This document shows positions 7,061-55,074 of a stretch of DNA of 64,000 bases, piece by piece. Numbering within the stretch: the first letter of the stretch is position 1; every line of letters begins with the position of its first letter. The notes below the pieces were generated by a model. It did not search any database, had not been told where the DNA came from, and worked only from the letters and a program-made list of their open reading frames with translations. The position numbers were made by a program, and so were the translations under genes. The DNA is taken from the IMG/VR virus record IMGVR_UViG_3300010885_025649, positions 62,001-126,000 of that record; one strand, 5' to 3'.

Positions 7061-8989
7061 TTAACTAACCTGTAGCTCATTATAAGCTTTAAATGTTAGT
7101 GGAAAGATAGGTTCAGCAAGTTGTTTAAATGCTATAGCATATTGACGAATCTCCCATTGTGCATCTTCAGATAAACGTAATCCTAAGAAATGTAATAAAG
7201 ATCTTAGATTAAAAGTGATATATAAACTTGTATAAGTGCAATGTGGTAAAACTCCTCTAGCTTGTTCTCTACACACACCATTAGCTAATAACTGCTCATA
7301 TATTTGATAAGCTTTATTAACTTGTTCTGCATATAATTCTCGTACTAACTCTTGATTAATATCCGGATTAGATACACTAGATTGTCTATTAGTTTTACCT
7401 TGCCCTCGAAACTCTTTAGGAATATAAGCTTGGTTCTTGACTACAATATATCTTGCACTTTCCTGATTAAATGAGTTATGAACCACAATTCCATTAGCTA
7501 CAAAATTATGCCAAGGCTTTGTAACACACAAATCATAAGTATCTTGTTCTCCCATATATTCAATAGCAGTAACTTTAACGGGATGAGCTTTAAGTTTCTG
7601 GCCTATACGTTTATTTACTCGCACTCTAAATAAAACAGGTTTATTCAAAGCTTGTTCTGCAAAAGCAATTTCATTTGCTTGAGATTTATGAACTTCCATA
7701 TGACAAGATTTACAAAGAGTAATAAGATTATCAATGTCATAAGCTTTAGTTATATCAGCAGCAACTGGAATTATATGATGTGCATGAAGTATACTAGAAC
7801 CTTGTCCGCATTGTTGACAAGTATAATCATACTTTTCATGAACGACTTTAGCATTTAGTCTAGTCCATGCACCAATATTAGCCCGTTCAGTCGTAATACC
7901 CCCACGCCAGAAATTGTTCTTCTCGCCTACCTTTTGTTTAGCTCTAATTGATCTAACTTGGCGAGCTTCTGGAGTTAAGTTAATCTTATAACCAGTCTTA
8001 CCTTTATTCCAAGGAGTCTGATTTAGGAAGAGTTTATCTATTTCTTGTTTAGAGAATTTTAGATCATGTATCTTAAGCCATTTCCTAATAGTATGATAAC
8101 TACACTCTGCCTCTGACGCCATTTGTGCAACAGAATATCCATCTTGTCTACATTTCTGCATCCAATCATAATCTCTATATAATCCGCTACCAACAACAAC
8201 ATTACCATTAACCATAAAATAAGAATCTTTAGTCATAAGTACTTCATCATTTATTACTTGTACTCCAAGGGCATGTCCCATAGTTTGCCAACCTTCTGAA
8301 GTATAAACTTTATGATTAGTAGTCATAGTTAAAGTTTTATTATCTTCTAATGTAACTTTATATACTGGCTGTATACCTTGATAAACTACATCTTCAACAT
8401 GACCAGTTGTAAATAAACCAGTACTTTCATCTAAAACCCGCAGCCGCATATTACTAATTCGTTTCTGCTTACTACGAAATCCTGCAGGTAATTTACTATT
8501 ACATACTCTTTGTACTGTGGCCCAACCCACCCCAGTTTTATTAGCTATTTGTCTATAGTTAATATTAGCTGCAGCCATTTCTTTAATTTGGTCTACAACT
8601 ATTTGTGGAGTAGTTAATGGATGTTTTTCTCCAATATGCCAATCTTCATATAATTCTTTAATTGTTTTATTTAAAGATTTAGAAGTTACACCAGTATTAT
8701 TAACAAATGTAACTATAGTATCACCAGTAACACAACAACCAATACGATGTCTTAACATCTCTTGAACTACATATAATGGAGCGGTAGCTCTAAAGGTTAA
8801 TAGATTGTGTTCCACAGGGCTAAAATGTTTGTTCTTAAGTAAATATTTAATTAATTTATAATTATCTTCTTGTGATCTAACTTTAAGATCATTAGCTAAA
8901 GAAACTCTAGCTGCGGCGCAAATCATCGCATCATCACCGACATGCTGAATTAATTCAACATGACTAATATTATCTAATAAAGGATCCAT
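7061..8989 (-). CDS. thyX: FAD-dependent thymidylate synthase ThyX, intein-interrupted
   Basis: AAARVS, HFSPVEH and the signature RHRIGC|…|SFNQESARY; C-terminal REQARGVLP and NLRSLLHFLGLR…AQWEIR. Confidence 0.95.
   Translation of the reverse strand: MDPLLDNISHVELIQHVGDDAMICAAARVSLANDLKVRSQEDNYKLIKYLLKNKHFSPVEHNLLTFRATAPLYVVQEMLRHRIGCCVTGDTIVTFVNNTGVTSKSLNKTIKELYEDWHIGEKHPLTTPQIVVDQIKEMAAANINYRQIANKTGVGWATVQRVCNSKLPAGFRSKQKRISNMRLRVLDESTGLFTTGHVEDVVYQGIQPVYKVTLEDNKTLTMTTNHKVYTSEGWQTMGHALGVQVINDEVLMTKDSYFMVNGNVVVGSGLYRDYDWMQKCRQDGYSVAQMASEAECSYHTIRKWLKIHDLKFSKQEIDKLFLNQTPWNKGKTGYKINLTPEARQVRSIRAKQKVGEKNNFWRGGITTERANIGAWTRLNAKVVHEKYDYTCQQCGQGSSILHAHHIIPVAADITKAYDIDNLITLCKSCHMEVHKSQANEIAFAEQALNKPVLFRVRVNKRIGQKLKAHPVKVTAIEYMGEQDTYDLCVTKPWHNFVANGIVVHNSFNQESARYIVVKNQAYIPKEFRGQGKTNRQSSVSNPDINQELVRELYAEQVNKAYQIYEQLLANGVCREQARGVLPHCTYTSLYITFNLRSLLHFLGLRLSEDAQWEIRQYAIAFKQLAEPIFPLTFKAYNELQVS
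7475..8734 (-). mobile_element. Intein (420 aa) with HNH homing endonuclease
   Basis: Begins CVTGDT, block B LTMTTNHKVYT, ends YDL…HNFVANGIVVHN with +1 Ser. Central CQQCG…HAHHIIP…NLITLCKSCH plus PWNKGK motif and HTH-like segments. Confidence 0.92.
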
Positions 8990-9016: not shown

Positions 9017-12000
9017 TTAAAAACCGAGAGCATTAGGAGTTAAATCAAATACATATAAATCTAATACACCATTACCACTACCGGCATTAGTAACCCAACC
9101 TTCTAACTTTAATGTGTGAGTGGTAGTAGTTAAATCTAAACTTCCAATGGAAGTGGCAAAGTTAACTGTAGAGTAATTAGTGGTAGCAGTACCCATAAAC
9201 TTTAACCCACCATTAGCTGTAATTGTAGTACCAACCCCAAAACATCTCATTGTTCCTTGAATAATAATAGGCCCAACTTGACTATCAGTTAAAGTAACTA
9301 GTACAATTTGAGTTTCAGCATTTCCTGCATTATATTGAACTAATCTAATATTCTTAGTATTAGTAGCCGTATTACCACTAGCTTGAGCAACTATTTTAAA
9401 CGCTAACTCAGAACCTACTACAAAGGAGTTTGCAGGAACTGTTCTAATAATAGAAGATCCACCATTATCAACTACCACAGCATTAGCAGTAGTACTAGTA
9501 ATATTAATAACTCCTCTAGTATTATAAGCAGCACTATTAAGTCCTCTAGTTAATAACGTACTATTCCTCTTAAGAACATTAGAGTTAAATACCAAGCTAG
9601 TTACAGATTCATTAGAACTAGGGCAAGTAATATTACCAGCTAATAAAGTACAATCAGAGATATTATTATTACTAGAATTAACATATAAACTTACATCTCC
9701 AACCATAAATAAACATCTATCTAATACATTATATTGTCCTTGAATATACGCACCATAAGTATTACTACCATTATAAGAAGGTGTGCCGTTAAAATCACAG
9801 CCGATAAGTTTATTACTTAAGCATTGATTTCCATTACTATCTTTCTCACTTAACTGTAAGTAATATTTAAAGCCAATATTATTACAAGTAAAACTACTAT
9901 CTCTAACTGTATTAGAAATAGGAGCAATATCAATAATAGGAATAACAGTAAGATTATTAGTAGAACTTGCAGTAGCCGCATTACTAACAACCATAGAACC
10001 ATAATTAACCGCAGCAGATACACTTAACCCTGTGCCGGCTTTAGTAGTTGCTGTCGCAATAGTTAAAGTATATCCACTAATCTTAGTTAACTGGAATGAT
10101 TGGGTGGTAGCATCTCCATAGGTAATAGTTAATGTCATACCTACTACTAGATTAGTAGTAGATGATGCCGCAGTTAATGTGGTTCCATTAACTGTAGAGG
10201 TAGCAGTAAATACAATAGCAGTCGGATTAACAGTAGCAGCTAAAGAAGCATTAGTAGAATTAGCAGCTTTACTTAAGGTTATAGTTGTTCCAGAAACAGC
10301 AGTAATAACTGTACCGCTAGGAAATACTGTATCAGAAGCACTAATAACTAACTGCCCTATATTACCAGAGGTTAATCCACTAGCAGTCATAGTAGTACTA
10401 TTAAGTGTAGTGGCAGCAGTAATACTCGTAGGAGAGCCGGTCTTAGGATATTTAGTTCCTACTATTGTAGAAGCCGGAATACCTGTGCCATATATCTGTG
10501 TAGTTCCTGTAGTTAAAGCAGTAAGAGTGGTGTTTAATATATTAGCTATAAAAGTGCTACCAGAAGTAGTAATTCCATAGAAACTACTGGTATGATCATA
10601 ATTAGTAAGAACATAACCATTACCATTTCTAAGAGAATCACCATTGAATGCTACTAAAGTATCAGAGCTAATTCCATTCTCAACAATCTTAATACGATCA
10701 AATACATTATGGTGTGCACCGCCGGCAATCAAGCATTGATACCAAGTAGAAGTAACACCAGTACTAATAGTACCTGCATCTATAGTAAAGTCTTCATATA
10801 CATTATGGTGAATAGCTTCACTAATCTGAAATAGAGATCCTCTAGGCCCACCCGGAGAATTAGGATCTCCAGGACTTCCATCAGAGTTAACAGTAGCACT
10901 AGAAGTATTAGCATATTGTCCAGACCAACCAACTTGTATATTCTTAAAGTTAGAGTTATGACTGAAGTATGCAGTCTCTATAACTTTCTGGTGGAATAAT
11001 CCGGTTACATTTCTAAAGACAGTATAAGCAAAAGCATTACCATAAATAATCTGTCTAGCTTCTATATAAAGATCTTCAAAGAGACATTCAAAAGTACCAC
11101 CAGTAGCGGACCAAGGACCTAAAGATTTAATAGCAATTCCAGCTATAGTAGAATTACAGGTAACAAACTTCCTATTATATAATCCATCACTAGCATTAGC
11201 AGAAGAAGAAATAGTTAATCCGGTGGCAGTAGTTGTAGCTAAAGCAGGATTACCATTCTTATCTCCAATAGTAAAAGAAGTATTGGGAGTAACAGTCAAA
11301 ACATGACTATTAAGTGGAATACCCACCCCGGTAATTAAATCTCCTACAGTAACACTACGACTGGCTCCTAATGGAGTAGTACCACTAGTACTACCTGTAG
11401 TAATAGTATTGCTATTAAGTGTAATGGCACCTGTAATAGTAACTGTATCTCCAAAGTATCCATCAATCCTAACTGTAGAGCCACTATTAAAAGCAACTTC
11501 TAAAGGATATCTTAGAGTAATTACAGTATTACCCCCATTAATAGTAACCGCTTCCACTCTATTAACATAACCATTTAAAGAAATAGTTCTATTATTACTT
11601 GTAGTGGTATTCAAAGCACTATCATAATACGAAGAATCTTGATAATAAAGATTACTATCCTTTAGGAATAGAATACTACCTGCAGTAAATCTAGGAGTAT
11701 AGGCAGAAGTAACAAGAGTAATAGTTCTTGCACCCGCGCTAGCTGTAAAGCTAAATGGATATAGGAGATCTACCTCTACACCACCATAATTACCATTAAA
11801 GAATACACAAGAGGTTTGAATTCCACTTGTTGTAGGAGTGGTTGGGTTATAGAATAAGGCTGCTTTACCCGGCCCCCACAATTTAATATTATTAGGAGTA
11901 TACAAAGGGGGACTAATTAGATATTGTCCTGCTGGAGCATAAATAGAACCCCCACCAAGATTACTTAAAGTATCAAGAGCTAATTGAATATAAGAACTAT

Positions 12001-23732: not shown

Positions 23733-23821
23733 TGGGAGTGTAGGGAATCGAACCCTAACACGGGGCCAGTCCAGCCCACTTGAGGATATAAATCTCACGA
23801 TGCTCCATACATCACACTCCC
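23733..23821 (-). tRNA. Class II (Leu-like body) tRNA with UAU anticodon, nested in the outer tRNA
   Basis: GGGAGTG/CACTCCC-A73, loop TTTATAT, about 22-nt V-arm, T-arm TAGGG-TTCGATT-CCCTA; one A-C mismatch at the stem base. Confidence 0.7.
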
Positions 23822-26961: not shown

Positions 26962-28197
26962 TTAAACTCCTTGCTGTTGTTTTAACTGTTGCACTCGGTT
27001 ACATAACCAAGCATAGGCTTCAGCTTGATTAGTAATATAACCTTCAAGTACTAACTCATGTACTTCATCAATTATCTTCTTATAAATAGGCCCAGGAATA
27101 ACACCTCGCACTTGTAAATCCCGGCCTTGAATAAGATAAGGTAATTTATTATCTAGCACACCTGCTTTTTGTGCAAATTGCAAACAAGCATGAAGAGTAA
27201 TACCAGTAATAGCAAAATAGAAATCACATAAGATTCTTATATTAATAGACTTTAATTTGTGAGCTAATTGCCTAACCTTACTAATAGTGTCACAATCTTC
27301 AATAGCTTTATAGTAAAGGTATAATTCCAATGCAGGTTCTTCAATACGCCCGGTATTACAACTAAGAGTATTAAGTCTCCGGCTACCATAATAAGTATGA
27401 ACAACAACTGCAACCATAAATGCATGTTCATGTGCAGTTTTAGAAGCAACTTGTTTAGCCCGCTGTAAAATTATAGCCGGCTCATCTTCATACTTACCCT
27501 CAAACCAATACTTAAACCAGCCTACATCAGATAAGAACTTTAGGCCAAGCTCAGGATGATCACCTTTAACAAGCAACTTCTGGAACTCACCGCCAATTCT
27601 CTCCATAGAAAGGTCATTAGGGTTTAAGGATTTACACATCTCGATAGTAGCTGGATCTACAATCTGCAGATTAAAGCGAGAGATAAATTGCGCTCCGCGC
27701 AGAACCCGCAAGGGATCTTCTGCAAAAGCCGGTCCTACATGGCGTAGAATACCAGCTCGTAAATCTGCTCTACCATTATAAGGATCTAGGAATTCCCCAG
27801 TCACAAGATTAAGACCAATGGCATTAATAGTAAAGTCTCTTCTGGATGCACCTTCAGCAAAGGTCATGTTAGAATCGCCTTGAATAACAAAGCTGCGATG
27901 TTTATCACCAACTTTAGATTCACGACGAGGGAGAGAAACCTCAAGATCATTAACACTATATACTTGGAACTGTGCCCCTAATAGTTTAGGCTCCGAAGCT
28001 TTTACAGTCTCAGCATACCGATATAGTATATGATGTAGCTTCTCCGCTTCAATTCCATATACTTCAATATCTAAATCTTTAGGAGTAATACCCAAAAGCA
28101 TATCTCTAACAAAGCCACCAACTGCATAGACTTTAGCAGTGGGAACAAAGTTAATGACAAACTGAGCAAAGTTGTGGCCTTTCTGTATTAGTTCCAT
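26962..28197 (-). CDS. tRNA nucleotidyltransferase (CCA-adding enzyme, class II)
   Basis: VGGFVRDMLLG…DLDIEV, SRRDFTINAI, DPYNGRADL, FAEDPLRVLRGAQF, GRDL. Confidence 0.92.
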   Translation of the reverse strand: MELIQKGHNFAQFVINFVPTAKVYAVGGFVRDMLLGITPKDLDIEVYGIEAEKLHHILYRYAETVKASEPKLLGAQFQVYSVNDLEVSLPRRESKVGDKHRSFVIQGDSNMTFAEGASRRDFTINAIGLNLVTGEFLDPYNGRADLRAGILRHVGPAFAEDPLRVLRGAQFISRFNLQIVDPATIEMCKSLNPNDLSMERIGGEFQKLLVKGDHPELGLKFLSDVGWFKYWFEGKYEDEPAIILQRAKQVASKTAHEHAFMVAVVVHTYYGSRRLNTLSCNTGRIEEPALELYLYYKAIEDCDTISKVRQLAHKLKSINIRILCDFYFAITGITLHACLQFAQKAGVLDNKLPYLIQGRDLQVRGVIPGPIYKKIIDEVHELVLEGYITNQAEAYAWLCNRVQQLKQQQGV

Positions 28198-30325: not shown

Positions 30326-30976
30326 TCAAGTTAATAATGCTTCTAGCAATTCCGGATCAATAGGTAATCTTCTAAGATTAGGAACTAGTAATTCATTCAT
30401 CCAATGTGCATGAGTGGTAACATGATTAGCGCGGACATATTTACCCACACTAGTACTAAACTCATCCATAAAGAAAGCTTCTCTTAATCTAACTACATAA
30501 CCTTCACATAAATCTCCATTAACTATATGTAGCGGCTGGAAAGAATTATCCCATATACCTTCATAAAGAACAGGTACAGTAGGCAATCCAAAGTAATTAC
30601 ACCAAGTAACTACATCATCCCAACTTAAACATTCATCATCTTCCCAAATATTAAATACTTGGAAATACGCTATTAAGTTCTTGTAATAAATACTATGTTT
30701 AGCATATAGATTCTCCCCACAAATCCGCATATTTGTGGGGATATCAAAGGAGAATAAACTATGTAATCTACTTACAAAGGTTCTACTTTTATGATAGGGA
30801 GAATCTATAGATCTAGCATGTAAACCATTAGTATACATAGTAGTATTCTCCCCATCCATCTTCGCAGTAATAACTACTTCTTTACCTTCAAAGGGATTAA
30901 AGGTTAATCTTTTATCATCTGAAGTAGCCCCTGGAGAATCGGGTAAATGTAATGTACGAGGATATTTAGTGGCCAT
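30326..30976 (-). CDS. ATP-dependent RNA ligase (Rnl2-like)
   Basis: KYPRTLHLP.SPG.TSDDK, KMDGENTT, ICGENLYAKHSI, EGYVVR, KYVR; start MATKYP at 30976. Confidence 0.85.
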   Translation of the reverse strand: MATKYPRTLHLPDSPGATSDDKRLTFNPFEGKEVVITAKMDGENTTMYTNGLHARSIDSPYHKSRTFVSRLHSLFSFDIPTNMRICGENLYAKHSIYYKNLIAYFQVFNIWEDDECLSWDDVVTWCNYFGLPTVPVLYEGIWDNSFQPLHIVNGDLCEGYVVRLREAFFMDEFSTSVGKYVRANHVTTHAHWMNELLVPNLRRLPIDPELLEALLT

Positions 30977-31055
30977 ATTTACTTTAGCTCTGATAAGTTT
31001 ACTTATATAATCTAGTAAGTTAAACATAAGAATTATACGAGGCTTTTGTCAAGTG

Positions 31056-31437: not shown

Positions 31438-32740
31438 TGGGTCTAAAGCCCCGTCCCTTTAGGGCGGCTTTTTATCCTCGTTCGTGCTATCATAAGAACA
31501 GGAGGAAACAATGATTGTCTTTGAGTTCAAAACCTACGGCAAAGCAAGCCAATTCACTGCGATTGATGAGGCTATCCGAACGATGCAATTCATTCGGAAC
31601 AAGTCTATTCGTTTGTGGATGGACGGCCAAGCTAAATCTTGGGTAGAACTCTCCCGTCATTGTGCCCTGCTTGCTAAAGAGTTTGAGTTTGCCAACAAGC
31701 TCAACTCTATGGCTAGACAAGCTGCTGCCGAACGCGCATGGGCTAGTATCTCCCGATTCTACGACAACTGTAAAAGCAAAGTACCCGGTAAGAAAGGGTA
31801 CCCTACTTTTCAGAAAGACTGTAGAAGTGTTGAGTACAAAACCTCTGGTTGGAAGCTATCAGAAGACCGGAAAAGAATAACCTTCACCGACAAGATTGGC
31901 ATTGGTTGTTTGAAGTTAAAAGGCACCCGTGACTTAAACTTCTACGCCCCAGAGCAAATCAAAAGGGTGCGGTTAGTCAAACGTGCGGACGGATACTACG
32001 CGCAGTTCTGTGTCTCAGTAGATAGGTCTGAAGAACTAGAGCCAACAGGAAGTGCAGTTGGTTTGGATGTAGGGCTTAAAGAGTTCTACACCGACTCCAA
32101 TAACCAAACTGTTGATAACCCTCGCTTTCTAAGGACTGGTGAGAAAGCTATAAAGCAGACTCAGCGCAGAGTATCTAAGAAAGTAAAAGGCTCAAATAAT
32201 CGACACAAGGCCAAGAAGACACTAGGCAAACGCCACCTTAAGGTAAGTAGGCAACGCAGGGACTTTGCAATCAAGACTGCAAGGTGCGTAATCAGGTCAA
32301 ACGACCTAGTAGCTTATGAAGACTTAAGGATTAAGAACATGGTGAAGAACCATTGTTTGGCTAAGTCAATAAACGATGCCTCTTGGTACATGTTCCGTCA
32401 GTGGTTGGAGTACTTCGGCAAGATATTTGGCAAGGTAACAATAGCAGTACCAGCAGCCAGAACAAGTCAAGAATGCTCAAACTGTGGGGCTATTGTTGTC
32501 AAGTCATTATCCACTAGGACTCACGCTTGTAAGTGCGGGTGCGTGTTGGATAGAGACCACAACGCAGCGATTAACATTTTGATGAGAGGATTGGGTACCG
32601 CAGGGCATGTGGGAACCTTTGCGCTAGACGCAAGAATCGCTTGGGGAGACACGACCTCTACTCTGGTTGGAGCAATCCTGCCCGTGCAAGCCGTCTCGTA
32701 GAACCAAGAATCCCCGCACCTTTAGGTCGGGGAGTGTCAA
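31438..32740 (+). mobile_element. IS200/IS605-family (IS1341-type, TnpB-only) element
   Basis: Left hairpin AAAGCCCCGTCCCTTTAGGGCGGCTTT; right hairpin CCCCGCACCTTTAGGTCGGGG ending GTGTCAA; no tnpA; higher GC. Left boundary +/-3 nt. Confidence 0.85.
31511..32701 (+). CDS. tnpB: RNA-guided endonuclease TnpB
   Basis: RuvC-I GLDVGLKEF, RuvC-II AYEDL, Zn finger CSNCG…CKCG, RuvC-III DRDHNAAIN. Confidence 0.95.
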   Translation: MIVFEFKTYGKASQFTAIDEAIRTMQFIRNKSIRLWMDGQAKSWVELSRHCALLAKEFEFANKLNSMARQAAAERAWASISRFYDNCKSKVPGKKGYPTFQKDCRSVEYKTSGWKLSEDRKRITFTDKIGIGCLKLKGTRDLNFYAPEQIKRVRLVKRADGYYAQFCVSVDRSEELEPTGSAVGLDVGLKEFYTDSNNQTVDNPRFLRTGEKAIKQTQRRVSKKVKGSNNRHKAKKTLGKRHLKVSRQRRDFAIKTARCVIRSNDLVAYEDLRIKNMVKNHCLAKSINDASWYMFRQWLEYFGKIFGKVTIAVPAARTSQECSNCGAIVVKSLSTRTHACKCGCVLDRDHNAAINILMRGLGTAGHVGTFALDARIAWGDTTSTLVGAILPVQAVS

Positions 32741-34195: not shown

Positions 34196-34217
34196 ACAAA
34201 AGCCCCCGTAAGGGGGC
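34196..34217 (-). terminator. Intrinsic terminator ending the tmRNA transcript
   Basis: GCCCCC-TTAC-GGGGGC-TTTT. Confidence 0.8.
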
Positions 34218-34266
34218 CGATGTCTAACTAGTTGGGTAACAAGGCTAGTTAGCAACCCCGCTCAGT

Positions 34267-34317
34267 TTACGCAGCTACAAGAGCGCGCTTACGAGAGAAA
34301 GGATAAATGTTATTGAC
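34267..34317 (-). other. tmRNA tag reading frame (A)VNNIYPFSRKRALVAA*
   Basis: Direct translation; resembles cyanobacterial ANNIV.F.R..AA tags. Confidence 0.9.
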
Positions 34318-34417
34318 CTTTATTTTGTTTGTGTTTCTTCGCTTACACTGCGTTCAGTGGTACTCTTTCCCAATCATGTCGAAACCTGTATATCCCCGAG
34401 TAGTGGAGATAAGGGGA

Positions 34418-34698
34418 CACGTTACCCCCAGTTTTCACTGAGGCGTGGACTATTCCTTCAACCAAATGCGTGTCTTTGGTTGCCAAGCATTTAAAGCATT
34501 ACTGCTTTCCTAGTCACACTTAAAGTTAGACAAAGCTAATCACGCTCGAAGTGCTCTATGAGTCTCTAGACCATCGTTACCATCACTGGTAGTTTTGGTA
34601 CGGTGTTAACATGTCTGGTTACCCAGATTTAGTCTTCGCCGTTTGAGCTTGGTTTACATTCAACCATTACTGATTGAAGCGACTAACTCTTTCGAGTA
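34418..34698 (-). ncRNA. Group I intron (281 nt, ORF-less) in the tmRNA T-loop
   Basis: Exon …TTCGAU| with P1 U-G pair; P3 GCTC/GAGC; R GAGACT; S GAAGGAATAGTCC; P9 GAAA hairpin; terminal G then TCCCCT. Confidence 0.9.
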
Positions 34699-34871
34699 AT
34701 CGAACCCCTGTCCAGTCATAGTACTCAGTACCACCTAGTCCTCTTCTTAATAAGATCTGTTGAGAACAGTTAGACCCACCGTTATAAGGCCACGGACACG
34801 GGCGCCGAAGATTAAACTATCAGGGCCAGGACGAACCTTGGCCCAACAGCTACAAAGCCTTTGCTTTGTAT

Positions 34872-34952
34872 CTAGCTGTCATCACGATTAACACCAATTA
34901 CAGTAACAAGCAGAATGGCCAGTAGAAAAATGAGGCCACATCCAAGATCCAT
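34872..34952 (-). CDS. 26-aa membrane peptide
   Basis: GGAGA RBS; MDLGCGLIFLLAILLVTVIGVNRDDS*. Confidence 0.4.
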   Translation of the reverse strand: MDLGCGLIFLLAILLVTVIGVNRDDS

Positions 34953-34990
34953 GACAATCTCCAGTGTGTGTGTGGTTAACTAAACTAAAA

Positions 34991-35259
34991 CTCCTCGAAA
35001 AGGATTCGAACCTTTGACCAGTCGATTACTTTACCACTACGGTTTTCACCGCCCTTTCAGTTTGTGGTCTGGACTTTCTCTTCATCCTATTTCTAAGAGC
35101 ACTCTATAAAGTCTCTACACTTGCCCGATCTTACGACCTGCTAGCTCGGGATTGGCATTTTAAAGCTTTCCCCGATTTAGGAGTGTTTTCATCTATTCAT
35201 TTCTAAATAGCGCTGCTATCATTTTACAGTCGACCGCTCTACCACTGAGCTACCGAGGA
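34991..35259 (-). tRNA. tRNA-Asn(GTT), intron-containing
   Basis: Exon 1 35226-35259 ends GTCGA-CTGT; exon 2 34991-35028 begins TAA-TCGAC; spliced loop CTGTTAA; TCCTCGG/TCGAGGA-G73. Confidence 0.92.
35029..35225 (-). ncRNA. Group I intron (197 nt) between anticodon positions 35 and 36
   Basis: P1 CUGU/GCAG with U-G; P3 CACTC/GAGTG; P4 TCGGG/CCCGA; P7 GACTTT/AAAGTC; GAAA P9; terminal G. Confidence 0.92.
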
Positions 35260-35869: not shown

Positions 35870-36556
35870 TTAGATCTCTAAAACTACATCAACAGGATTA
35901 GTAGCATTACAAATTACTCTAGTATCATAGGCTTCATAGTCACAAGGAGTATGGGTGTGCCCGTGGAGCCAGAATTTAGGTTTATTACTTTGGATAATAT
36001 CCGCGCAGTTATTTACATAAGCGGTATTAGTAGGCTGATTCACATATTCTCTAGCAACACTTGCCCAAGTAGGTAAGTAGTGGGTTAATACCACATCCCC
36101 TTCTTGGATAGCATTCCTTAAGTAATTCCTATGAACAAGTCCTAGAAGTACAAACTCCTCATAGCTTAAGCCAATATATTTAGAATCATTAATTTGAGTT
36201 CTAATCATCTGTTGTTCATGCCAAGAATTTGTAGGGCCGTACCACAAAGTACATCCCACAAATCTCTGATTATTAATAGTAACAGTCTTACCCAAATCTA
36301 ATAAATGAAAGTTACTATACTCACTATCTAAAGTATAAAGCAGCTCTTGTACTCTTTGATAAGTACTTCCATAGTATTCATGGTTGCCTGCTACATACAC
36401 GATATGGTCATAGTTATCACACCAATAAGGAACAATACTTTGTAGTTGATACGCCGCCGCAATATCTCCTACTGCAAGTAAATTAGGTGCGGCAATATTA
36501 GGTAGCACATTCTTACGATGCTCAAGGTGGGTATCTGAATACACTTGGCATTGCAT
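35870..36556 (-). CDS. Calcineurin-like metallophosphoesterase
   Basis: SDTHLE, VGDI, AGNHEYY, LTHYLP, WLHGHTH; start MQCQVY at 36556. Confidence 0.88.
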   Translation of the reverse strand: MQCQVYSDTHLEHRKNVLPNIAAPNLLAVGDIAAAYQLQSIVPYWCDNYDHIVYVAGNHEYYGSTYQRVQELLYTLDSEYSNFHLLDLGKTVTINNQRFVGCTLWYGPTNSWHEQQMIRTQINDSKYIGLSYEEFVLLGLVHRNYLRNAIQEGDVVLTHYLPTWASVAREYVNQPTNTAYVNNCADIIQSNKPKFWLHGHTHTPCDYEAYDTRVICNATNPVDVVLEI

Positions 36557-36583
36557 GTTAAATTCCTTTGGAGTTGAGTGAAA

Positions 36584-36655
36584 TGGGTCTGACAGGACTC
36601 GAACCTGCAACAACCTCCGTGTAGGGGAGGGACTCTACCATTGAGCTACAGACCC
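36584..36655 (-). tRNA. tRNA-Val(TAC)
   Basis: GGGTCTG/CAGACCC-A; CCTCC-CCTACAC-GGAGG (C at position 33). Confidence 0.85.
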
Positions 36656-52863: not shown

Positions 52864-52949
52864 CGGGGAGCTGGTAGAATCGAACTCCAAGCGCTTCCGC
52901 GCTCCATCCGCTTTCAAGGCGGTGCAGATCCCAGATCTGATAACTCCCC
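52864..52949 (-). tRNA. tRNA-Ser(TGA) with long D-stem and bulged T-stem
   Basis: GGGGAGT/GCTCCCC-G73; D-stem CAGATC/GATCTG; ACCGC-CTTGAAA-GCGG; V-arm. Confidence 0.8.
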
Positions 52950-52958
52950 AATCACCAA

Positions 52959-53047
52959 AGGAAAGCCTGGGATTCGAACCCAGGGGAGCCTCTCGGCCCC
53001 GACACTTTAGTAGAATGTTGCAATCGGCCATGCTCTGCCAGCTTTCC
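52959..53047 (-). tRNA. tRNA-Ser-type body with ACT anticodon
   Basis: GGAAAGC/GCTTTCC; ACATT-CTACTAA-AGTGT; long V-arm. Confidence 0.8.
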
Positions 53048-53330
53048 CTATACTTTTATTATAACATATCTTTACAGCGCTGTTGAATCTCAGAATCTAA
53101 AAGAATTTAATTCTTCCTGACTAACACCTATCAACTCTTGTTCAATTAATAAACTTAATTTATTCATAAGACCTCCTAAGGTTTGATCTCTTGTAAGTAT
53201 TGAACAGCACGCATAATAGTACAACCTAATATAGCTTTTAATTGTATAGCCGCTTCTAAAACATTCATTGATCACCTATAGTTTGTGTAATTGGAGAGCG
53301 GTGTACTTTGGTAGGTGAGCCGCTTTCCTT

Positions 53331-53394: not shown

Positions 53395-54657
53395 GTGCGT
53401 CTTACTCACCAGTACCGAATTAAGCCCTCACCAGAACAGGAAGCCTTGATGCTTCACTGGCTAGAGCTTTTACGTCAGCACTGGAATTATGCACTAGGTC
53501 AGCGTTTGGACTACCTACGTCGTACCCGTAGCCCGATTGACCGTTGTTCCTTGCGTAGTTGCCCGATTGGTGAGATTCCGGAACGACCCAACTACTACAC
53601 TCAGGCTAGAGACCTAAAGCAAACCAAGGCTCTATTCCCCGAGTACAAGGATATTTACCTAGAGGTGCAGCAACAGAACCTCATCCGCTTGGATAAGGCT
53701 TGGGATAGGTGGACTAAACCTGATGCCACAGGGAAGAGAGCAGGACGACCCCAGTTCAAGAAAACTGATGAGCTTCGTTCTTTTACTTTCCCCCGTGTGA
53801 ACTGCCCTAAAGCCGGGGTGCATCTCTTAGGTGAGGTGATAAAGTTCTCTAAAATCGGTGTGATGCCCGTTATCCTGCATCGTCCGATTCCTGAAGGGTT
53901 TGTCATCAAGACCGCTACGGTGGTTCACAAAGTAGACGGTTGGTTTGTTTCTCTGAGCCTGGAAGATACGAGCATCCCCGCTCCAATGCCCTGTGAGGAG
54001 GTCAAGACAGCAGTAGGTGTGGATGTTGGGCTAAAGGAGTTCCTTACTACTTCTGAGGGTGATGCAGTTGCGATACAGCACATCTACCGCAAGGCTCAGA
54101 AGCGTTTAGCCCGTCAGCAGCGCAAGTTAGCCCGTCAACAAAAGGGGAGCAAGAATGCAGTAAAGCAGAAGAAACGGGTAGCCCTGGTACATCAACGCAT
54201 CCAAAGACAGCGTGAGAACTTCCACTACAACACGGCGCATGACTTGTGCAGCAAGTACGACTTGATAGCGGTGGAAGACCTGAACATCAAGGGTTTGGCT
54301 AGAACCCGGCTAGCTAAGTCAATCCTAGATGCAGCTTGGGGAGCGTTCCTACAAAAACTAGAAGCAGTGGCGGTAAAACGCGGCAAGCTAGTCATAAAAG
54401 TCAATCCTTGGGGAACAAGTCAGGATTGCTCGGAGTGTGGGACAAAGGTTCCTAAGACCCTCAGCATCCGTACTCATGAATGTCCGAAGTGTGGGCTAGA
54501 GTTAGACCGGGATGTGAATGCAGCTCGGAATATCCTAGAACGTGCGCTATGCACCGTGGGACTCACGGTGTCAGCCTGTGGAGGCTTAGGGGTTGCCCAG
54601 CCAATGAAGCAGGAAGTCTCTCTAGTGATAGGGAGAAGCCCCCGCCAGACCCGTTAG
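53395..54657 (+). CDS. tnpB: RNA-guided endonuclease TnpB
   Basis: HTH_OrfB start YRIKPSPEQ; GVDVGLK; AVEDL; CSECG…CPKCG; DRDVNAARN. Confidence 0.95.
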   Translation: MRLTHQYRIKPSPEQEALMLHWLELLRQHWNYALGQRLDYLRRTRSPIDRCSLRSCPIGEIPERPNYYTQARDLKQTKALFPEYKDIYLEVQQQNLIRLDKAWDRWTKPDATGKRAGRPQFKKTDELRSFTFPRVNCPKAGVHLLGEVIKFSKIGVMPVILHRPIPEGFVIKTATVVHKVDGWFVSLSLEDTSIPAPMPCEEVKTAVGVDVGLKEFLTTSEGDAVAIQHIYRKAQKRLARQQRKLARQQKGSKNAVKQKKRVALVHQRIQRQRENFHYNTAHDLCSKYDLIAVEDLNIKGLARTRLAKSILDAAWGAFLQKLEAVAVKRGKLVIKVNPWGTSQDCSECGTKVPKTLSIRTHECPKCGLELDRDVNAARNILERALCTVGLTVSACGGLGVAQPMKQEVSLVIGRSPRQTR

Positions 54658-54972: not shown

Positions 54973-55000
54973 CTTAAGCTCCAGATTGTGTGTTTGAAAG

Positions 55001-55074
55001 GGCGGTTGAAAGGAGTCGAACCTATACACCCCCTGTGCTATATACAGGTGCTCTACCACTGAGCTACAACCGCC
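55001..55074 (-). tRNA. His-type tRNA body with non-His anticodon loop (ATATAGC)
   Basis: G-1 GCGGTTG/CAACCGC C73; CCTGT/ACAGG stem intact. Confidence 0.7.

What the first reader, a model, noticed from the sequence alone, without database searches (positions are those of the whole stretch)
34197..34870. Phage-encoded circularly permuted tmRNA that appears to keep its pseudoknots
Seen: the acceptor piece (T-arm plus TATCTCC-A) lies upstream of the 5' end (GGGGATA…GGTTTCGAC), separated by only 6 nt (CTACTC). The coding piece has pk1, the tag (A)VNNIYPFSRKRALVAA, an intact pk2 (GGGT/ACCC plus CTAACTAG/CTAGTTAG) and a terminator. GC-rich hairpins upstream may be pk3/pk4 remnants. Established: two-piece tmRNAs are known from alphaproteobacteria, some betaproteobacteria and marine picocyanobacteria, usually with pseudoknots lost. 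Inference: an independent permutation, with the break after pk2, of a cyanobacterial-type tmRNA in a phage.
Basis: partly seen in the sequence, partly recalled or inferred. Interest (0 to 1): 0.85.

Follow-up and report, generated by a model that had tools for sequence, protein, structure and literature searches.

The report
Intron-split two-piece tmRNA gene in phage

Summary
A circularly permuted tmRNA gene is present on the minus strand at about 34733-34201. It is the 3' end of a 281-nt group I intron (34698-34418) joined to the 3' half of the real T-stem. The real 5' half of the T-arm lies 281 nt upstream. ARAGORN finds nothing in the raw DNA. After the intron is removed in silico it calls a permuted tmRNA with tag VNNIYPFSRKRALVAA. 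The intron has P1-P9, a U.G 5' splice site, a terminal G, and sits at T-loop position 7, the usual site of known tmRNA introns. "Independent permutation" is not supported. The gene shares its order, spacer length, acceptor motif, post-tag pseudoknot motif and terminal hairpin with the picocyanobacterial and phage two-piece family. That pseudoknot covaries across 26 family members. Phage two-piece tmRNAs are already published. What is new is permuted plus intron: the 2025 tmRNA database (97,179 sequences) lists no such form, and my scans found it only in this phage, in two independent assemblies. Splicing and function are inferred, not shown.

The parts
34734..34875 (-). Upstream leader with three hairpins, including GGGCCAAGG-UUCG-UCCUGGCCC. 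It is uncertain whether this belongs to the acceptor piece.
   Evidence: MFE -45.7 kcal/mol, z = -2.1. There is no counterpart upstream of the L315 tmRNA. The motif GGACUAGGUG at its 3' edge matches the Rfam cyano_tmRNA consensus.
34699..34733 (-). Acceptor piece, 5' exon. It holds the P2 strand UGGUAC (34733-34728), GGAC, the T-stem 5' half AGGGG (34709-34705) and T-loop nucleotides 1-6 UUCGAU (34704-34699). The last base is the -1 U.
Evidence: RF04321 alignment. The 17-mer is unique in the window with 0 matches expected by chance.
34418..34698 (-). Group I intron, 281 nt, with no ORF, at T-loop position 7. It has P1 (exon CGAU with GUCG, a U.G at the splice site and a GAAA-capped extension), P2, P3, P4, P5/P5a (GUAA loop), P6/P6a (GUGA loop), P7 with a bulged A, a 72-nt P7.1/7.2-like insert, P8, P9 (GAAA loop), and a terminal G at 34418.
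   Evidence: RF00028 scores 35.9 bits, E = 3.4e-7, below the gathering score of 50. MFE -84.1 kcal/mol, z = -4.0, recovers P2-P6, P8 and P9. All helices were checked as standard pairs. Removing it restores a tmRNA for ARAGORN.
34404..34417 (-). Acceptor piece, 3' exon. It holds T-loop nucleotide 7 (U34417), the T-stem 3' half CCCCU (34416-34412), the acceptor 3' strand UAUCUCC (34411-34405, giving G3.U70) and discriminator A34404. No CCA is encoded.
34398..34403 (-). Intervening sequence CUACUC. It is removed when the precursor is cut into two pieces.
   Evidence: A 6-nt spacer is the most common length in host and phage cyano-type genes.
34201..34397 (-). Coding piece. It holds the acceptor 5' strand GGGGAUA (34397-34391), GGUUUCGAC (34386-34378), the P2 strand GUACCA (34363-34358), a hairpin or possible pk1 (34359-34340), the tag frame (34317-34267), the post-tag pseudoknot (34262-34224) and the terminator hairpin (34218-34201).
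34267..34317 (-). Tag reading frame. The resume codon is GUC, then 16 codons, then UAA: VNNIYPFSRKRALVAA.
   Evidence: ARAGORN on the spliced sequence. The closest relative, L315, encodes ANNIVPFARKRSLVAA at the aligned position.
34224..34262 (-). Helix 1 is AGCGGGG (34262-34256) with CCUUGUU (34244-34238). Helix 2 is CUAACUAG (34252-34245) with CUAGUUAG (34231-34224).
   Evidence: Alignment A1 of 26 family members. The five core pairs of helix 2 each have 6-12 sequences changed on both sides. The covariation score is 0.391 against 0.178 in shuffles, with 0 of 500 shuffles as high.

Best explanation
This is a circularly permuted (two-piece) tmRNA gene of the picocyanobacterial/cyanophage family, carried by a large uncultured phage. 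Its acceptor piece is interrupted in the T-loop by an ORF-less group I intron.

Proposed maturation:
1. The minus strand is transcribed, probably together with the upstream tRNA genes. Transcription ends at the hairpin plus U-tract at 34218-34192. This is inferred.
2. The intron folds. Guanosine attacks after U34699, the exons are ligated after G34418, and the T-arm AGGGG-UUCGAUU-CCCCU is rebuilt. The anatomy is shown in silico; catalysis is inferred.
3. The acceptor stem (GGGGAUA with UAUCUCC, carrying G3.U70) closes over the 6-nt spacer. RNase P cuts before G34397, a 3' end is made after A34404, and CCA is added because the gene reads CUA there. A phage tRNA nucleotidyltransferase gene lies at 26962-28197. 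The result is two RNAs held together by the acceptor stem and P2. This follows from established two-piece tmRNA biology and is inferred here.
4. The RNA is charged with alanine and, with the host's SmpB and EF-Tu, enters stalled ribosomes. It adds (A)VNNIYPFSRKRALVAA, whose LVAA end marks the protein for proteolysis. This is inferred.

The likely benefit to the phage is to keep ribosome rescue running during infection.
For: - RF04321 tmRNA_permuted scores 47.9 bits (gathering score 47) with a 282-nt insertion placed inside the T-loop.
- RF01851 cyano_tmRNA aligns over model positions 1-288, E = 6.7e-12.
- RF00028 group I intron covers the inserted stretch, E = 3.4e-7.
- ARAGORN finds nothing in the raw DNA. 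After deleting exactly 34698-34418 it calls a permuted tmRNA with a 16-residue tag.
- The boundaries obey the intron rules (-1 U paired to G in P1, terminal G) and rebuild a canonical 7-nt T-loop at position 7. That is the main site of the 883 known tmRNA introns, which average 293 nt.
- All core helices are made of standard pairs, and the fold has z = -4.0.
- A second assembly differs by 19 SNPs in 22 kb but is identical across the locus.
- Family membership is shown by the shared motifs and the covarying pseudoknot.
- The closest relative, L315, has an uninterrupted T-loop.
Against: - There is no expression or splicing evidence.
- The intron score is below Rfam's gathering score (35.9 against 50). 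The tmRNA_permuted score is only just above its threshold, and cyano_tmRNA is below its threshold (48.8 against 70).
- No diverged copy of the intron-bearing gene was found, so neither the intron nor this gene's own helices could be tested by covariation.
- The resume codon is GUC (Val), whereas every family member collected here starts with an Ala codon.
- P2a pairing near the T-arm is poor.
- No SmpB gene was seen among nine ORFs tested. The host is unknown, and RIIA has no relative above 31% identity among isolates.
Confidence: 0.82

Rival explanations
1. This is an intron-less permuted tmRNA whose T-arm is the hairpin GGGGG-UAACGUGU-CCCC directly upstream of the acceptor strand. The GC-rich hairpins further upstream are decayed pk3/pk4.
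For: That hairpin can form 5 pairs. The cyano_tmRNA model used it and still scored 48.8 bits.
Against: - The loop is 8 nt and lacks the UUCRA consensus.
- ARAGORN rejects the unspliced sequence.
- The sequence 5' of it pairs poorly with the coding-piece P2 strand (-7.8 against -15.9 kcal/mol).
- A perfect family-consensus half T-arm plus P2 strand sits 281 nt upstream.
- The stretch in between has a complete group I core.
Confidence: 0.03
2. A dead gene. The tmRNA was inactivated by an insertion that resembles a group I intron but no longer splices, or the tmRNA has otherwise decayed.
For: The branch in the family tree is very long, with at most 60% identity to any other member. The resume codon is non-Ala. 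P2a is weak. The Rfam scores are sub-threshold.
Against: - Every core intron helix, the U.G splice site and the terminal G are intact.
- The excision point restores a canonical T-loop exactly.
- G3.U70, GGUUUCGAC, an open tag frame ending in LVAA, the pseudoknot and the terminator are all intact.
- The locus is invariant between two populations that differ elsewhere.
Confidence: 0.1
3. An independent permutation. The phage gene arose from a one-piece cyanobacterial tmRNA by its own rearrangement, separately from the picocyanobacterial two-piece lineage.
For: The tag ending RKRALVAA resembles tags that I recall for one-piece cyanobacteria. The sequence is very divergent. My tree contained no one-piece references, so the tree cannot exclude this.
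Against: - It has the same gene order, the same end point just after the post-tag pseudoknot plus a terminal hairpin, the same short spacer, and the same CCUUGUUACCCAA and GGACAGGGGUUCGA motifs as the two-piece family.
- The single one-piece reference, L316, lacks the pseudoknot motif and is less similar.
- ALVAA endings also occur in two-piece genes (L042, L241).
Confidence: 0.07
4. An assembly artefact or chimera that joined unrelated fragments.
For: Both sources are short-read metagenome assemblies.
Against: Two contigs from different metagenomes (3300010885, 212 kb; 3300009154, 155 kb) carry the same arrangement while differing at 19 positions elsewhere. The join points are exactly the positions expected for an intron.
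Confidence: 0.01

Closest known systems
Two-piece (permuted) tmRNA of marine and freshwater picocyanobacteria (Rfam RF01851 cyano_tmRNA; Gaudin et al. 2002, cited in PMC3968760; Williams 2002 from my own memory, not read)
   Same: - Gene order: acceptor piece, then spacer, then coding piece.
- CCA is not encoded, and the spacer is short.
- The acceptor motif GGACAGGGGUUCGA.
- A tag of the NNI..F.R...VAA style.
- A post-tag pseudoknot with the CCUUGUUACCCAA motif, followed by a terminal GC hairpin.
   Different: - The T-loop is split by a 281-nt group I intron.
- The resume codon is Val, not Ala.
- Helix 2 of the pseudoknot is 8 bp, against about 5 bp.
- The sequence is very divergent (at most 60% identity).
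- It lies on a phage genome.
Phage-encoded two-piece tmRNAs (Buchholz et al. 2022, PMC9004378: 53 in isolate phage genomes, mostly marine or aquatic; many more in IMG/VR)
   Same: A permuted tmRNA carried by a large aquatic phage. It is of the cyanobacterial type, like those of cyanophages. No phage SmpB gene was found among the nine window ORFs tested.
   Different: None of the roughly 90 IMG/VR permuted genes I examined has an intron. This phage has no close relative among isolates.
Intron-form tmRNA genes (Williams 2002; 883 sequences in 21 phyla, PMC11915505)
   Same: - A group I intron in the T-loop at position 7.
- A -1 U paired with G, and a terminal G.
- Length close to the 293-nt average.
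- An insert in the P7.1 position, as in the intron alignment of that paper.
- No homing endonuclease, as in 96% of them.
   Different: Those are described as standard one-piece genes. Here the host gene is permuted, so the intron lies in the upstream (acceptor) piece and splicing must come before or accompany cleavage into two RNAs. Direct sequence homology to that intron family was not tested.
L315, IMGVR_UViG_3300003878_000001 (119 kb): the closest relative found
   Same: A permuted gene with tag ANNIVPFARKRSLVAA, the same pseudoknot motif, and an acceptor part 80% identical. RF04321 scores 57 bits.
   Different: Its T-loop is intact. Instead, its intervening sequence is 341 nt long and holds an HNH_3 endonuclease ORF. 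It has no terminal GC hairpin of the same kind.

Membership tests
Permuted (two-piece) tmRNA | A tRNA-like domain: a 7-bp acceptor stem with G3.U70, a T-arm with a canonical 7-nt T-loop, and the GGUUUCGAC D-loop analogue. | tested here: met
   Met only after in-silico removal of 34698-34418. ARAGORN then calls a permuted tmRNA. In the raw DNA the T-arm is split.
Permuted (two-piece) tmRNA | The acceptor (3') part is encoded upstream of the 5' and coding part. | tested here: met
   The spacer is 6 nt.
Permuted (two-piece) tmRNA | A tag reading frame with a resume codon, a stop codon and a hydrophobic C-terminus. | tested here: met
   VNNIYPFSRKRALVAA followed by a stop. The resume codon is GUC rather than GCN.
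Permuted (two-piece) tmRNA | The Rfam curated score for RF04321 (gathering score 47). | tested here: met
   47.9 bits, which is marginal. The model spans the intron as an insertion.
Cyanobacterial two-piece lineage (RF01851) | The Rfam curated score (gathering score 70). | tested here: not met
   48.8 bits, E = 6.7e-12, with a full-length alignment. The model had to use a false T-arm because of the intron. The spliced sequence could not be scored with the tools available.
Cyanobacterial two-piece lineage (RF01851) | Lineage-specific architecture: a post-tag pseudoknot and a terminal hairpin end the coding piece. | tested here: met
   The motif is shared, and the helices covary in 26 sequences.
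Cyanobacterial two-piece lineage (RF01851) | Phylogenetic placement inside the two-piece clade relative to one-piece cyanobacterial tmRNAs. | tested here: inconclusive
   The gene falls among cyano-type two-piece genes, but on a very long branch, and the tree holds no one-piece sequences. The only one-piece comparison is pairwise, to L316.
Permuted (two-piece) tmRNA | Two mature RNA pieces, alanine charging, SmpB-dependent tagging. | not testable with these tools
   Needs northern blot or RACE, an aminoacylation assay and a tagging assay.
Group I intron (RF00028) | The conserved core P3-P8 with the P3/P7 pseudoknot, P1 with U.G at the 5' splice site, and a terminal G. | tested here: met
   All helices are standard pairs. 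The MFE fold recovers most of them, z = -4.0.
Group I intron (RF00028) | The Rfam curated score (gathering score 50). | tested here: not met
   35.9 bits, E = 3.4e-7 in a 1.3-kb search. The hit was not listed in the whole-window search.
Group I intron (RF00028) | Self-splicing with exon ligation. | not testable with these tools
   Only the in-silico ligation product could be checked.
Intron-form tmRNA (PMC11915505) | The intron lies in the T-loop at one of positions 2, 3, 7 or 8, with boundaries that rebuild the loop. | tested here: met
   Position 7. The loop UUCGAU|U is rebuilt.
Intron-form tmRNA (PMC11915505) | A standard (unpermuted) gene order. | tested here: not met
   The gene is permuted.
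Intron-form tmRNA (PMC11915505) | The intron is homologous to the tmRNA intron family (the tmRNA_intron covariance model). | not tested
   That model is not in Rfam, and no reference intron sequence was available to me.

The most novel reading that the evidence does not exclude
This is the first tmRNA gene found to be both circularly permuted and intron-interrupted. It would be a fourth gene form beside standard, permuted and intron. Its RNA must be spliced back together at the T-loop and then cut apart at the acceptor stem to give an active two-piece molecule. Mobile elements repeatedly target this phage tmRNA lineage: a group I intron here, and an HNH endonuclease gene in the spacer of relative L315. 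This suggests that the T-loop intron moved, or homed, from one-piece bacterial tmRNA genes into a permuted phage gene.
Probability: 0.5. Interest if true: 0.65.

Novelty: new variant of a known kind. Interest (0 to 1): 0.55.

Why it matters
- **A combination that appears to be undescribed.** Permutation and intron invasion are the two known ways a tmRNA gene departs from the standard layout. The largest catalogue (97,179 sequences, PMC11915505) lists them only as separate forms, and my literature searches found no report of both together.
- **An ordered maturation pathway to study.** The RNA must first be joined by splicing and then split by tRNA-processing enzymes. That makes it a compact system for asking how the order of RNA processing steps is set, and whether RNase P or 3' processing can act before the T-arm exists.
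- **A detection blind spot.** ARAGORN finds nothing here, and the lineage-specific Rfam model falls below its threshold. Intron-bearing permuted genes are therefore probably under-counted in phage and metagenome annotation.
- **Reach of the T-loop intron.** Together with the neighbouring intron-bearing tRNA-Asn and the relative with an HNH gene in its spacer, it extends T-loop position-7 tmRNA introns to a permuted, phage-borne gene.

Tried and rejected
- **Search of isolate phages.** blastn of the locus against INPHARED found no match.
- **Looking for relatives through RIIA.** In IMG/VR this returned only the same two contigs. Against isolate phages the best identity was 31% or less, so no host could be inferred.
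- **Looking for other intron-split permuted tmRNAs.**
  - A brute-force splice-and-ARAGORN test on 22 loci where the acceptor/5'-end pattern matched but no tmRNA was called recovered only the window copy (L001; L002 is the same locus). The rest were cut by contig ends or were a tRNA followed by a standard tmRNA.
  - The pattern for a half T-arm not followed by its stem gave 43 chance hits in coding DNA.
  - A general 3'-junction pattern in IMG/VR found none.
  - The specific 3'-junction pattern in 241 M metagenome records found only the same phage.
- **L015.** It looked like a second case but is a small, unpermuted, tag-less tmRNA-like gene.
- **One-piece cyanobacterial references.** The genome scan returned 120 of 120 two-piece picocyanobacterial genes. 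Only one one-piece sequence, L316, was obtained.
- **Tree.** It has long-branch problems and places the alpha-type group inside the cyano-type, so I do not rely on its topology.
- **The two introns.** The tmRNA and tRNA-Asn introns share only about 19 nt around P7, so they are not recent copies of each other.
- **Synteny with L315.** Judged by eye from the translations, the ORFs downstream of the two tmRNAs show no obvious similarity; no alignment was run.
- **Papers.** Gaudin 2002, Williams 2002 and Sharkady & Williams 2004 are not held in the library.
- **SmpB.** It was not found among nine window ORFs of 150-190 aa. The other 148 kb of the phage were not examined.

Full report
**What is at the coordinates**

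The feature is on the minus strand. Rfam at curated thresholds reports RF04321 tmRNA_permuted at 34267-34733 (47.9 bits, gathering score 47). The alignment is unusual. The model's T-arm is matched as GGGG UUCGAU, then 282 unmatched bases, then CCCC UUAUCUCCA. With relaxed thresholds two more families hit the same stretch. RF01851 cyano_tmRNA covers 34202-34499 over its full length, with E = 6.7e-12 but 48.8 bits against a gathering score of 70. RF00028 group I intron covers 34426-34762, with 35.9 bits and E = 3.4e-7. ARAGORN finds 13 tRNAs in the window, all on the minus strand, but no tmRNA.

**The intron**

I placed the boundaries by the usual rules. The 5' exon ends at U34699, giving ...AGGGG UUCGAU. 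The intron runs from 34698 to 34418 (281 nt) and ends in G. The 3' exon starts at U34417, giving U CCCCU UAUCUCC A. Deleting exactly this stretch makes ARAGORN call a permuted tmRNA with tag VNNIYPFSRKRALVAA. The undeleted sequence gives nothing.

The rebuilt T-loop is UUCGAUU. The insertion point is T-loop position 7. This is the main site of the 883 known tmRNA introns, which average 293 nt (PMC11915505).

The structural elements are as follows:
- P1 pairs exon CGAU with intron GUCG, with U.G at the splice site and a GAAA-capped extension.
- P2, P3, P4, P5/P5a, P6/P6a, P7 (with a bulged A), P8 and P9 all consist of standard pairs.
- An unconstrained MFE fold recovers P2-P6, P8 and P9, with z = -4.0.
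- A 72-nt insert lies between P7 and the 3' strand of P3. This is where subgroup IA introns carry P7.1/P7.2. The subgroup assignment is my inference.
- No ORF lies in the intron.

The hairpin next to the acceptor strand (GGGGG-UAACGUGU-CCCC) has an 8-nt loop without the T-loop consensus. Its G-run is the 3' strand of P9. The sequence before it pairs poorly with the coding-piece P2 strand (-7.8 kcal/mol). The true upstream exon pairs at -15.9 kcal/mol, including a perfect UGGUAC/GUACCA. The 17-mer CUGGACAGGGGUUCGAU at 34715-34699 is unique in the window, with none expected by chance. It matches the family consensus. So most of the "GC-rich hairpins upstream" are intron helices. The hairpins still further upstream (34734-34875) fold only modestly better than shuffles (z = -2.1). 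They have no counterpart in the closest relative, so I cannot assign them.

- The acceptor strand with G3.U70 and discriminator A.
- The 6-nt spacer.
- The 5' end and GGUUUCGAC.
- The tag frame (34317-34267).
- The 8-bp helix CUAACUAG/CUAGUUAG.
- The terminator-like hairpin at 34218-34201.

CCA is not encoded, because the gene reads CUA at that point.

**It is a phage, and the order is not an artefact**

PHROG and Pfam hits include RIIA, a tail protein, a tRNA nucleotidyltransferase, an RNA ligase and NAMPT. The window is identical to IMGVR_UViG_3300010885_025649 (212 kb). A second contig from another metagenome (3300009154, 155 kb) differs at 19 positions in 22 kb but at none in the locus. 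No cultured relative exists. The host is therefore unknown. The example of phage Melnitz shows that tmRNA type does not always match the host (PMC9004378).

**Relation to known two-piece tmRNAs**

Phage two-piece tmRNAs are already described: 53 in isolate phage genomes, mostly aquatic, with cyanophage genes grouping with cyanobacteria (PMC9004378). A loose pattern scan of IMG/VR returned about 90 permuted tmRNAs. About 40 of them have cyanobacterial-style tags and spacers of 4-9 nt. A scan of species-representative genomes returned 120 of 120 permuted genes from Prochlorococcus, Synechococcus, Cyanobium and Vulcanococcus. Six nucleotides is the most common spacer length.

Our gene shares several features with all of these:
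- the acceptor motif;
- the motif CCUUGUUACCCAA after the tag;
- a terminal GC hairpin that ends the coding piece.

In an alignment of 26 such 3' regions, the helix between the hairpin loop and the downstream strand covaries strongly. Each of its five core pairs has 6-12 sequences changed on both sides, and 0 of 500 shuffles reach the observed score. The first helix is GGGG/CCUU plus a covarying pair (CG 10, GC 8, UA 2). So the "pk2" is real, but it is a family trait and not a peculiarity of this gene.

The one one-piece cyanobacterial tmRNA I could obtain (L316, RF00023 125 bits) lacks the motif. It is less similar in the acceptor part, at 0.63 against 0.78-0.83 for two-piece genes. In a tree the gene falls among cyano-type two-piece genes, but on a very long branch and without one-piece references, so the tree alone decides nothing. 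Taken together, common descent with the known two-piece lineage is much the simpler reading.

pk1 is not established. A 5-bp hairpin (CACUG/CAGUG) competes with a small H-type alternative (CACU/AGUG plus CGC/GCG). In family members the homologous element behaves as a plain hairpin with one compensatory change. L315 also has only a hairpin.

**Closest relative**

A tag-based pattern found L315 (IMGVR_UViG_3300003878_000001, 119 kb). It has tag ANNIVPFARKRSLVAA, the same pseudoknot motif and an intact T-loop. Its intervening sequence is 341 nt long and contains an HNH_3 endonuclease ORF. RF04321 scores 57 bits on it. It serves as an intron-less comparison for the T-loop. It also shows a second kind of mobile-element insertion in this lineage.

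**Is permuted plus intron known?**

The 2025 tmRNA database paper lists five categories: standard, permuted, intron, and two classes without a coding sequence. It describes the intron form as a separate gene form from the permuted one, and gives no combined class. Two literature searches found no report of one. My targeted scans of IMG/VR and of 241 M metagenome records found the configuration only in this phage. Those patterns were narrow, so absence elsewhere is not proven.

**Mechanism and verdict**

The best-supported reading has the following steps:
1. A precursor is made.
2. It self-splices to rebuild the T-arm.
3. It is cut by RNase P and a 3' processing activity.
4. CCA is added.
5. 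The result works as a two-piece tmRNA with the host's SmpB.

The gene anatomy is shown by the tools. Splicing, processing, charging and tagging are inferred.

The overlooked intron makes the locus a new variant of a known kind and moderately interesting.

Noticed in passing
window 34990-35259 (-); intron 35029-35225: A tRNA-Asn(GUU) gene just upstream of the tmRNA is split in the anticodon loop, after position 35, by a 197-nt group I intron. RF00028 scores 41.4 bits, E = 3e-9. P1 pairs CUGU with GCAG. ARAGORN finds the tRNA only after the intron is removed. It shares only about 19 nt around P7 with the tmRNA intron.
   Followed up: yes
L315 2101-2421 (-) (IMGVR_UViG_3300003878_000001): The closest relative's permuted tmRNA has a 341-nt intervening sequence between its acceptor and coding pieces. 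That sequence holds an HNH_3 homing-endonuclease-like ORF of 106 aa (Pfam E = 2.1e-13). ARAGORN misses this gene too.
   Followed up: partly
window 26962-28197 (-), 30326-31027 (-), 35870-36613 (-): The tRNA-rich region also encodes a tRNA nucleotidyltransferase (CCA-adding enzyme), an RNA ligase (PF09414) and a metallophosphoesterase. Together these may form a phage tRNA maturation or repair set. This is relevant because the tmRNA gene does not encode CCA.
   Followed up: partly
window 31511-32701 (+) and 53395-54657 (+): Two TnpB/IS605 OrfB-like genes (OrfB_IS605 plus the Cas12f1-like TNB domain; PHROG transposase) lie on the strand opposite to nearly all other genes of this phage region.
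   Followed up: no
window 7061-8989 (-): A 642-aa ORF matches thymidylate synthase at both ends and HNH endonucleases in the middle (residues about 345-470). This may be an intein or an endonuclease fusion.
   Followed up: no
window 52865-52949 (-), 23733-23821 (-), 52958-53048 (-), 55000-55073 (-): The tRNA set is odd. One hit just reaches the tRNA-Sec threshold (47.9 against 47). ARAGORN also calls tRNAs with anticodons UAU (Ile), ACU (Ser) and AUA (Tyr).
   Followed up: no
L020, L022, L023, L024, L058, L067 and others (IMG/VR): Many IMG/VR cyano-type permuted tmRNAs encode much longer tags than host genes, up to 31 residues. The usual ANNIVAFSR core is embedded between added N-terminal and C-terminal extensions.
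   Followed up: no
L015 about 11470-11565 (contig IMGVR_UViG_3300020045_003401): A roughly 75-nt unpermuted tmRNA-like gene. It has only a tRNA-like domain (GGGGUUG...GGUUUCGAC, a short helix, a T-arm, ...CUCCA) and no tag frame.
   Followed up: partly
window 34871-34951 (-): A 26-codon hydrophobic mini-ORF (MDLGCGLIFLLAILLVTVIGVNRDDS) lies between the tRNA-Asn and the tmRNA. It is followed by two strong hairpins without a U-tract.
   Followed up: no
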